Positions 42,275-43,899 of a DNA stretch of 64,000 nt are shown one piece after another. Within the stretch, counting starts at the first letter, position 1. Each line of letters opens with the position of its first letter. A model generated the notes under the pieces. The model was not told where the DNA came from. It did no database searches and saw only the letters and a program-made list of their open reading frames with translations. The stretch is from Isurus oxyrinchus (Eukaryota), in contig JANJGN010000038.1 in the NCBI GenBank assembly GCA_026770705.1, positions 124,001 through 188,000 on the forward strand, given 5' to 3'. A program made the position numbers and the translations under genes.

Positions 42275-42308
42275 CACTGTCACCTGGTGGCCAATCGTTG
42301 TCATTACT
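42275..42308 (-). promoter_or_regulatory. CTCF-like site C (reverse)
   Basis: Minus strand reads AGTAATGACAACGATTGG-CCACCAGGTGACAG-TG; one core mismatch. Confidence 0.6.
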
Positions 42309-43865
42309 GCTATCGTGAAAATGTCGACGTTCGTAACTGTTGTTGATAGAAACGTATCAACAAACAAATTTGCGCTTACATTCTGCTCAACACATTTTTA
42401 ATGAAAGGGAATTAAATGCTGTGAAAATAACTGAAGAAGCAAATCCACCTTTGCAAACATTAGGAATAATGTGTTTTGTATGGACACACTCACAGACACA
42501 AATAGACGCAGATACATATGTTGAGGCTCAGTCACACAACCAGTAACACGGAAAACGTGAATGTAAAGGCCCTCAGGAGAAACATTCTTTAACATTAAAA
42601 CACGGTGTACAATAGACACAACAGAGATTTCCACTAATCTTTATAAACTGCAATGCACTCTGGCTCTCCTATCCTTCAGTCCCTCAATCCAGTTCAAATT
42701 TCCGAGATTGTCATAAGATTCGACCAGTACTTTCAACAAAACTGTGACATAACACCAGAGCAATGGGAAATTGTACACAGGTTCTGATGGCTGTGACCAA
42801 GACTAAACGTATTTTACAACAAACAAAAATCCATCTTCCCACCTCGTCAAATATATGTTCTTTAATTATTATGAGACATACTTCTCCCTTCATCCATCTG
42901 TCCATTTACCTATCAGAGAAAAAAATGCTGTACCACAATAACTGACATCGGCAATAGATTAATATAAACAAAGTGTCCAGTGCTGTCATTACAGAAAAAG
43001 GGCCTTATTTAACATAAACAGCGATAAGGACTCCTGCACTCTGTGCAGTTTAGTCCATGAATAACTATGGCAGACCCCGTCGAATATAAACAGGGAGATG
43101 GCCTCATGCAATTTAAAGGTGGGCATAAAATAGTGCAGAAATAAAGGAGAAAGGGTCTAGTGTAATATAAATAAGGACATGGATGAGTGCAATATAACCA
43201 GACACATGCTTCAGTGCAGCAATAACTGAAAAAGTGCCTAGTGTAAAGGATGGATGCGCACAGAGTTTATTGCACCAATGTCCGTGACTGGACCCAGTAG
43301 AATATGGACGGAGACATGGTCAGGTTATGGCCTTGCAAACCCCTTCAGTAACTTGAACACTTCTTTTAAAACATCTCTTAACTCTCTCTGCTCTAGGATG
43401 CTATTTCTATCGTTTTTCCACATAACGGAAGCCCCTCACCCCATTCTGATAAATCCTTCGACAGCATCTTCAGAACCCGAGAGCTCTGCGACATAGAAGA
43501 CCAAGGACAGCAGGTGAATGGAAGCACCAACAACTGCTAGTGCCGCTCCAAGTCACACACAATATTCTGATTTGGAAATATAGATTTTTTTCCTTCGTTG
43601 TTATTGAGTCAAAACCCCAGAGCTCCCTTCCCACCAAAACCGTTTTTGGATTTGAAACACACACAAGGCGGCTCACCAACACATTCTCCAGGGCAATTAG
43701 GTATGGCTAGTAAATGTCGGCCTTGACAGAAATGTCAAAATCTGAGAATGAAGTAGAACTAGCAATAACTGAGTGAAGGTCTGCTGTGATATAAACATAG
43801 ACATGCTATGGAGCAGTAATAATTGAGGCAATGTATGTATGTTTCCATGGAAGCAATCGCGCTAG

Positions 43866-43899
43866 CACTGCCACATGGTGGCGAAAGATTGCCATTGCT
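43866..43899 (-). promoter_or_regulatory. CTCF-like site D (reverse)
   Basis: Minus strand reads AGCAATGGCAATCTTTCG-CCACCATGTGGCAG-TG; one core mismatch. Confidence 0.6.

What the first reader, a model, noticed from the sequence alone, without database searches (positions are those of the whole stretch)
42275..43899. Tandem pair of reverse-oriented CTCF sites 4-5.6 kb upstream of the V gene: candidate cluster insulator
Two near-consensus cores (CCACCAGGTGACAG, CCACCATGTGGCAG on the minus strand) both carry AAT..CAA at the same offset as the extended ZF9-11 module, and share flanking sequence. They point away from the Ig cluster and converge on sites A/B at 5.4 and 10 kb. Inference: they anchor a loop enclosing the repeat/satellite domain and wall off the cluster. 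That could help explain the established observation that shark IgH clusters rearrange internally rather than between clusters, and is analogous to mammalian IGCR1 CBEs.
Basis: partly seen in the sequence, partly recalled or inferred. Interest (0 to 1): 0.7.

Follow-up and report, generated by a model that had tools for sequence, protein, structure and literature searches.

The report
Repeat-borne CTCF-like sites upstream of shark IgM
The two CTCF-like motifs upstream of this shark antibody gene cluster are real, but they are old copies of a repeated "motif head plus minisatellite tail" module found four times in the window, so a role as a dedicated cluster insulator remains an untested guess.

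Summary
Each matches the CTCF core consensus at 13 of 14 positions. The window holds 5 such matches against 0.5 expected.

They are not independent. It has a ~90-nt head carrying the motif at a fixed position, followed in the same phase by units of the 27/54-nt satellite that fills 17-31 kb. The motif is the best-conserved 19-nt stretch of the module (p about 0.001). But a ~50-nt block around it is nearly as conserved, and the substitutions in sites 1 and 2 are no milder for CTCF than random ones. Site 2 has T at what I recall as a near-invariant G.

The claimed ZF9-11 upstream module does not match the published consensus at allowed spacings. Read depth shows the whole 6 kb upstream of V is present in dozens of copies, so the sites belong to the repeated cluster unit. 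Both sites face away from the cluster, unlike an IGCR1-type barrier. Occupancy and insulation could not be tested. Another first-stage note reports the same module elsewhere in this genome.

The parts
42275..42293 (-). Site 1: CTCF-like 19-mer TGGCCACCAGGTGACAGTG (core 42277-42290). It has one core mismatch (GGC to GAC).
43866..43884 (-). Site 2: CTCF-like 19-mer TCGCCACCATGTGGCAGTG (core 43868-43881). It has one core mismatch, T at what I recall as a near-invariant G, and it also scores 13.3 bits on the + strand (near-palindrome).
42253..42344 (-). Head of module copy 1 (~90 nt, motif at a fixed position).
   Evidence: nhmmer head profile E 4e-23; leave-one-out E 0.0025, in register
43843..43934 (-). 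Head of module copy 2.
   Evidence: nhmmer E 2e-23; leave-one-out E 0.005, in register
42156..42252 (-). Short satellite-unit tail of module copy 1. It includes an inverted satellite unit at 42181-42231.
42954..43840 (-). Satellite-unit tail of module copy 2 (units at 42954-43322 and 43768-43840), interrupted by a SINE-like insertion.
43454..43750 (.). High-copy SINE-like fragment between the two sites. The depth peak is at 43650-43849 and read loose ends at 43665-43716.
5338..5875 (+). Module copy A: head 5338-5429 with the motif at 5388-5406 (TGTCCAGCAGATGGAACCG), tail units 5443-5875.
9937..11512 (+). Module copy B: head 9937-10027 with a perfect core at 9991-10004, tail units 10018-11512.
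17194..30865 (+). Main 54-nt (27-nt sub-period) satellite arrays (17194-17923 and 19775-30865). They have the same unit family and the same orientation as the tail units of copy 2 (42954-43840). They contain no CTCF-like motif.
2802..2820 (-). A fifth CTCF-like site, GTGCCAGCAGAGGGTGGGG (16.8 bits). It is not in a recognisable module.
47878..62653 (+). IgM heavy-chain cluster: V exon 48066-48350 and four C exons in ORFs at 56437, 57571, 61358 and 62204-62653 (the last with the secretory tail). It has no CTCF-like site of 11 bits or more inside.

Best explanation
Sites 1 and 2 are genuine matches to the vertebrate CTCF core motif, but they are repeat-borne. They are two of at least four ancient, diverged copies in this window of a composite module. 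The module has a ~90-nt head with the motif at a fixed position, joined in a fixed phase to a tail of 27/54-nt minisatellite units. Copies A and B lie on the + strand left of the big satellite array, and copies 1 and 2 lie on the - strand right of it. The 6 kb upstream of V, including both sites, belongs to the IgM cluster unit that is present in dozens of copies in this genome. The ~50-nt block around the motif has been kept better than the rest of the module. This suggests (inference) that some protein binds it, with CTCF the best candidate for site 1 and site B and a weaker one for site 2. If CTCF binds, the convergent orientation predicts loops that close over the satellite spacer and leave the cluster outside them. 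That is a spacer-sequestering boundary, not an IGCR1-like wall facing the recombination centre. Shown here: the motifs, the module homology, the conservation excess, the copy number and the orientation. Inferred: binding, looping and any effect on V(D)J recombination.
For: The motifs and their excess over shuffles are shown. The four-way homology covers head and tail (alignment A3), and a profile of the four matches each copy over ~160 nt (E 1e-39 to 1e-42), with its 3' part matching the satellite array. The homology holds outside the motif. A profile of the 52 nt upstream of the motif trained on A+B gives sites 1 and 2 as the top two non-self hits in the window, in register. A profile trained on 1+2 gives A (E 0.016) and B, and leave-one-out profiles give E 0.0025 and 0.005. 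A and B share 560 nt at 68% identity. No motif-less head exists in the window. The motif window ranks 1 of 177 for conservation (0.74 against 0.46, permutation p 0.0009). In a neutral-decay simulation, the probability that all four copies keep >=16.4 bits is 6e-2 to 8e-6 across the settings tried, and 6e-4 to 4e-5 at the flank-calibrated divergence of 0.27. Depth is 15-20 all along 42050-48049 from only ~1.9 Gb of raw whole-genome reads, equal at both sites and at the V leader, so there are dozens of copies. Repeat-borne CTCF sites are a known phenomenon in vertebrates: 72% of lamprey CTCF peaks lie on repeats (PMC5504073). CTCF motif orientation bias at TAD boundaries in a skate is reported in PMC10115646.
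Against: There are no occupancy data. No ChIP run could be listed. The conserved block runs from about -30 to +19 around the core (CATTTT.AC, AAT..CAA), which is further than CTCF contacts explain, and the upstream part does not match the ZF9-11 consensus. Substitutions do not avoid CTCF-critical positions. The correlation between information content and variability is -0.19 (p 0.43). The changes in site 1 and site 2 are as damaging as random ones (p 0.63 and 0.72), and site 2 carries T at the G that I recall as near-invariant. There are only four copies and they are not phylogenetically independent. Flank misalignment could inflate the contrast between motif and flank conservation. That the module is dispersed genome-wide rests on an unchecked first-stage note.
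Confidence: 0.6

Rival explanations
1. One reading: the pair is a dedicated insulator of the IgM cluster. It would be bound by CTCF, loop to A/B, wall off the cluster and so enforce within-cluster V(D)J joining, like IGCR1.
For: The motifs are strong and lie 4-5.6 kb upstream of V. Their geometry with A/B is convergent. The sites are part of the multicopy cluster unit, so every copy of the cluster probably has homologous positions. The motif block is conserved above its flanks. Sharks activate only 1-3 of about 10 IgH genes per B cell (PMC2435157), which calls for some form of per-cluster control.
Against: The same module also occurs at A/B, 38-42 kb from V, and reportedly elsewhere in the genome, so it was not built for the cluster. 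Both sites face away from the cluster, have the same orientation and lie upstream of V, unlike IGCR1. There is no ZF9-11 module. Site 2 has a damaging core change. No strong site was found inside the cluster or in the 1.3 kb after it within the window. No literature on CTCF at shark Ig clusters was found.
Confidence: 0.12
2. The motif is a look-alike with no host function. The head is a cis-acting or simply slowly decaying part of an old mobile or satellite-seeding element, and CTCF does not bind it in vivo.
For: The motif sits at a fixed place in a repeat. The whole ~50-nt block is conserved, not just the CTCF core. The substitution pattern is not CTCF-specific. There is no upstream motif. 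Read depth at the heads is no higher than in their flanks, so the family is old and inactive.
Against: Retention of a >=16-bit motif in all four copies at 50-65% pairwise flank identity is unlikely under neutral decay. One copy (B) is a perfect consensus. Strong core motifs of this kind are commonly occupied in vertebrates (established knowledge, not tested here).
Confidence: 0.25
3. The constrained element is an E-box (CANNTG) or another transcription-factor site, for example for E-proteins acting on the Ig locus, rather than a CTCF site.
For: All four copies keep CA..TG at the same columns: CAGATG, CAGATG, CAGGTG and CATGTG.
Against: Conservation extends well beyond 6 nt, to CCA.CA..TG..A..G. 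The module also sits far from the cluster at A/B. Any CTCF core with T at matrix position 12 contains an E-box by construction.
Confidence: 0.03

Closest known systems
Repeat-borne CTCF site expansions: SINE B2 in rodents, other retrotransposons in mammals, and hAT, Gypsy and unknown repeats in lamprey (PMC5504073; PMC10982698)
   Same: A CTCF core motif sits at a fixed position in a repeated element, so several dispersed, homologous motif copies arise in both orientations.
   Different: The carrier here is a short head joined to a 27/54-nt minisatellite tail, not a recognised SINE or DNA transposon, and no TE hallmarks were found. The copies are old (50-65% pairwise identity outside the motif). 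Occupancy is unknown.
Mouse Igh IGCR1 (CBE1/CBE2) insulator
   Same: Two CTCF-type motifs lie close together near an antigen-receptor V(D)J unit.
   Different: By my recollection, the IGCR1 sites are divergent, lie between VH and D, and one faces the recombination centre. Here both sites have the same orientation, lie 4-5.6 kb upstream of V and face away from the cluster. Function is untested.
CTCF-binding macrosatellites and tandem repeats (DXZ4, Firre; PMC5899154)
   Same: A CTCF-type motif is associated with tandem repeat DNA.
   Different: In those cases each repeat unit carries a site. Here only the unique head has it, and the satellite units score below 8 bits.

Membership tests
Vertebrate CTCF binding site (core motif CCASYAGRKGGCRS / JASPAR MA0139.1) | Match to the 14-nt core consensus | tested here: met
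   Sites 1, 2 and A match 13/14 and site B 14/14. Five hits against 0.5 expected.
Vertebrate CTCF binding site (core motif CCASYAGRKGGCRS / JASPAR MA0139.1) | High-information positions intact (the G of CCASYAG, and GGC) | tested here: inconclusive
   Site 1 has GAC for GGC. Site 2 has T for what I recall as the near-invariant G. Scores are still 21.9 and 16.4 bits, but the matrix was recalled from memory.
Vertebrate CTCF binding site (core motif CCASYAGRKGGCRS / JASPAR MA0139.1) | Upstream ZF9-11 motif (CAGCTGTTCC, 2-7 bp linker). This is optional, present in about 13-15% of sites, and typical of insulators (PMC12885311). | tested here: not met
   At most 3/10 matches at linkers 2-7 in all four copies. 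The best match is 5-6/10 at linker 9, in three copies.
Vertebrate CTCF binding site (core motif CCASYAGRKGGCRS / JASPAR MA0139.1) | In vivo occupancy by CTCF and cohesin | not testable with these tools
IGCR1-type V(D)J insulator | A pair of divergently oriented CTCF sites, one facing the recombination centre | tested here: not met
   Both sites are on the minus strand and face away from the + strand cluster.
IGCR1-type V(D)J insulator | Position between the V segments and the D-J recombination centre | tested here: not met
   The sites lie 4.0 and 5.6 kb upstream of the only V of the cluster.
IGCR1-type V(D)J insulator | Blocks loop extrusion or RAG scanning, so that deletion deregulates rearrangement | not testable with these tools
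   This needs Hi-C, ChIP and genetics.
Repeat-borne CTCF motif family | The motif is at a fixed position of a repeated element whose flanks are homologous between copies | tested here: met
   Leave-out profiles that exclude the motif recover the other copies in register.
Repeat-borne CTCF motif family | Many dispersed copies genome-wide | tested here: inconclusive
   There are four copies in 64 kb. An unchecked note, s1-300798, reports the module on another piece of the genome. Read depth at >=85% identity is not raised over the heads, so other copies must be old and diverged.
Repeat-borne CTCF motif family | The carrier is identifiable as a transposable element | tested here: inconclusive
   No Pfam or Rfam match, and no terminal repeats or target-site duplications were recognised.

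The most novel reading that the evidence does not exclude
The head-plus-minisatellite module is a CTCF-anchoring element that was carried along as the IgM cluster unit multiplied. In each of the dozens of units, convergent copies would loop out the satellite-rich spacer. Every V-D-D-J-C cluster would then sit alone at a boundary between loops. This could give a physical basis for cluster-autonomous rearrangement and for the activation of only a few IgH clusters per shark B cell.
Probability: 0.1. Interest if true: 0.75.

Novelty: new member of a known kind. Interest (0 to 1): 0.35.

Why it matters
How sharks keep V(D)J joining inside one of many nearly identical IgH clusters, and switch on only a few clusters per B cell, is unresolved. 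If these sites bind CTCF, each cluster unit would carry its own loop anchors, and that idea could be tested by ChIP and Hi-C. What this analysis shows is more modest. The sites come from a repeat module, as many CTCF sites in other vertebrates do. Their orientation and the missing upstream motif do not fit an IGCR1-like barrier. The module itself, a conserved 50-nt block fixed at the head of a minisatellite, is a small curiosity worth a genome-wide census.

Tried and rejected
1. Fetching other copies of the upstream region failed.
- A protein search with the spurious ORF over site 2 found nothing.
- Exact look-ups of four window ORFs found nothing.

2. ChIP-type runs: none was listed. This does not show that none exists.

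3. The variant table from reads is uninformative for the motifs. Only 40 of 752 differences are shown, so about 0.25 would be expected within the 38 motif bases. I draw no conclusion from their absence.

4. Cryptic RSS reading, checked by eye against the RSS consensus as I recall it. The 3' CAGTG of the motif resembles a heptamer end, but no nonamer lies at 12 or 23 nt. The best is 5/9 at site 1 and nothing at site 2. Rejected.

5. RNA gene or SINE promoter in the head: there are no Rfam hits of note.

6. Head as a diverged satellite unit: the satellite profile does not hit the head part upstream of the motif at E<=1. Left open.

7. TM exons of a preceding cluster in the window: none found.

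8. A first Markov-chain null for the matrix timed out and was replaced by local shuffles.

Full report
**Setting.** The window carries one shark IgM heavy-chain cluster on the + strand. The V exon is at 48066-48350, and four C-domain exons lie in ORFs starting at 56437, 57571, 61358 and 62204. The last ends in a secretory tail. The V exon is 83% identical to a Scyliorhinus torazame V-set protein. The 48 kb upstream of V is spacer. It holds a 54-nt (27-nt sub-period) satellite at 17.2-17.9 and 19.8-30.9 kb, smaller patches of the same units, LINE and SINE debris and a poly-C tract.

- CCACCAGGTGACAG is at 42277-42290 and CCACCATGTGGCAG at 43868-43881, both on the minus strand.
- This places them 5.6 and 4.0 kb upstream of the leader and V, facing away from the cluster.
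- Each matches CCASYAGRKGGCRS at 13/14. The window holds five hits at <=1 mismatch against 0.50 expected, and no shuffle out of 100 reaches five.
- With a 19-nt matrix (MA0139.1 as I recall it, so approximate) the scores are: site 1, 21.9 bits; site 2, 16.4; A (5388-5406 +), 19.5; B (9988-10006 +), 22.0; and a fifth site at 2802-2820 (-), 16.8.
- Five sites score >=16 bits against 0.27 in local shuffles.
- Applying the mammalian motif to a cartilaginous fish is justified. In the little skate, MA0139.1 motifs in ATAC peaks mark TAD boundaries with an orientation bias (PMC10115646). In lamprey, CTCF binds the same two-part motif (PMC5504073).

**What the sites are.** They are not independent.
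- Aligned in the same orientation, A, B, site 1 and site 2 share a ~160-nt block.
- A profile of that block matches each copy at E 1e-39 to 1e-42, and its 3' third matches hundreds of satellite units.
- The module is therefore a ~90-nt head (5338-5429, 9937-10027, 42344-42253, 43934-43843) with the motif at a fixed place, followed in a fixed phase by satellite units. These tails lie at 5443-5875, 10018-11512, 42250-42156 and 43840-42954. The last is split by a SINE-like insertion.
- Because profiles built from the copies match them by construction, I tested the homology outside the motif. A profile of only the 52 nt upstream of the motif, trained on A+B, returns sites 1 and 2 as the two best non-self hits in the whole window, in exact register. 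Trained on 1+2 it returns A (E 0.016) and B. Leave-one-out profiles give E 0.0025 and 0.005.
- A and B share 560 nt at 68% identity.
- No head without a motif exists in the window.
- A separate first-stage note (s1-300798) describes a 'CTCF-like site fixed at the head of a 27-bp minisatellite' on another piece of this genome. I did not see that sequence. It agrees with what I derived here.

**Copy number.** About 1.9 Gb of raw whole-genome reads of the same species were laid on the stretch. That is under 1x coverage for any shark-sized genome.
- Depth is 15-20 all along 42050-48049, the same over both sites as over the V leader.
- Read identities spread from 85% to over 99%.
- The whole 6 kb upstream of V, sites included, therefore belongs to a unit present in dozens of copies.
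- Depth is not raised over the heads, so there is no young, abundant head family.
- Only 43650-43849 is raised (depth ~114), from a SINE-like fragment.
- Contigs of a related species cover the region at >=85% identity. That is expected for a close relative and says nothing about selection.

**Is the motif constrained?**
- In the four-way alignment the 19 motif columns are the best-conserved window of 177. Sum-of-pairs identity is 0.74 against 0.46 elsewhere, with permutation p 0.0009.
- Pairwise identity is 58-84% in the motif against 49-66% in the rest of the head.
- I simulated neutral decay on a star tree. The probability that all four copies keep >=16.4 bits ranges from 6e-2 to 8e-6 across the two candidate ancestors and the per-lineage divergences tried (0.15-0.30). 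At the flank-calibrated divergence of 0.27 it is 6e-4 to 4e-5. A and B, and sites 1 and 2, probably share ancestry, so the true value is less extreme.

Two results temper this.
- First, windows starting up to 13 nt upstream are almost as conserved (0.72). Invariant stretches (CATTTT, AC, AAT, CAA) reach about 30 nt upstream of the core, which is further than CTCF contacts would explain.
- Second, the substitutions that did occur do not avoid CTCF-critical positions. The correlation of variability with information content is -0.19 (p 0.43). The changes in sites 1 and 2 are as damaging as random ones (p 0.63 and 0.72), and only lineage A looks mild (p 0.05).
- Site 2 has T where, in the matrix as I recall it, G is nearly invariant.

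Something keeps this ~50-nt block, but the evidence does not single out CTCF.

**The ZF9-11 claim.** The invariant AAT..CAA is real. The published upstream consensus is CAGCTGTTCC, separated from the core by typically 5 (range 2-7) bp (PMC12885311). At those spacings every copy matches at most 3 of 10 positions. The best fit, 5-6 of 10 in three copies, is at a 9-bp linker. I do not count this as an upstream module.

**Mechanism and orientation.** A and B are forward motifs and sites 1 and 2 are reverse motifs. The same rule makes sites 1 and 2 barriers for cohesin arriving from the spacer side, not from the cluster. By my recollection, the IGCR1 sites are divergent and lie between V and D, with one facing the recombination centre. 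None of these three features is met here. No site of 11 bits or more lies inside the cluster or in the 1.3 kb after it. The downstream flank is outside the window. If the unit is arrayed as spacer-cluster-spacer, each cluster would sit at a divergent boundary between spacer loops. That is an interesting picture, but it is entirely inferred. I found no paper linking CTCF to shark Ig clusters.

**Comparison and novelty.** The closest known kind is the repeat-borne CTCF site. Examples are SINE B2 and other retrotransposons in mammals, and hAT, Gypsy and unclassified repeats that carry 72% of lamprey peaks (PMC5504073). This case differs in its carrier, a head fused to a minisatellite with no recognisable transposon features, and in having no occupancy data. 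I file it as a new member of a known kind.

**Verdict and estimates.**
- Observation: confirmed.
- Interpretation: partly supported. The geometry holds. The ZF9-11 module and the IGCR1 analogy do not. Function is untested.
- Probability that CTCF binds in vivo: about 0.45 for site 1 and about 0.25 for site 2.
- Probability of a cluster-insulating role: about 0.1.

**What failed.** Attempts to obtain other copies of the region and ChIP-type runs gave nothing. The read variant table is too truncated to use.

Noticed in passing
window 17194-17923 and 19775-30865: About 11.8 kb of a 54-nt satellite with a 27-nt sub-period and strong GC skew. Small patches of the same units occur in both orientations at 5.4-5.9, 10.0-11.5, 12.5-12.7, 34.1-36.6 and 42.2-43.8 kb.
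   Followed up: partly
window 43650-43849 (loose ends at 43665-43716): A high-copy SINE-like fragment. Read depth is about 114 against about 17 around it, and reads run on into other sequence at both edges. Related pieces lie at 2133-2301, 35912-35961 and 40065-40137.
   Followed up: partly
window 42393-42520 and 44183-44405: An inverted repeat of about 125 nt (roughly 70-75% identity, with patches above 90%) brackets a 2-kb segment that contains module copy 2 and a (TG)n microsatellite. No target-site duplication was seen, and whether it is a transposon is unknown.
   Followed up: partly
window 2802-2820 (-): A fifth CTCF-like site (16.8 bits) that is not in a recognisable module. Together with site A it forms a divergent pair near the left end of the window.
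   Followed up: no
window 42184-42386: Contigs of the related species show joints that skip 203 or 236 nt here, exactly over tail and head 1. The matching sides are short (22-31 nt) and satellite-like, so this may be spurious. If real, some copies in that species lack module 1.
   Followed up: no
window 59108-60346: A LINE reverse-transcriptase fragment (RVT_1, E 2e-6, just below the Pfam cutoff) inside the intron between the second and third constant exons.
   Followed up: no
window 53980-55131: Four N runs (840 bases in total) lie within a TCTA-type microsatellite stretch between the V-D-J region and the first constant exon.
   Followed up: no
window 36845-36934: A poly-C tract of about 90 nt in the GC-richer 36-40 kb stretch of the spacer.
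   Followed up: no
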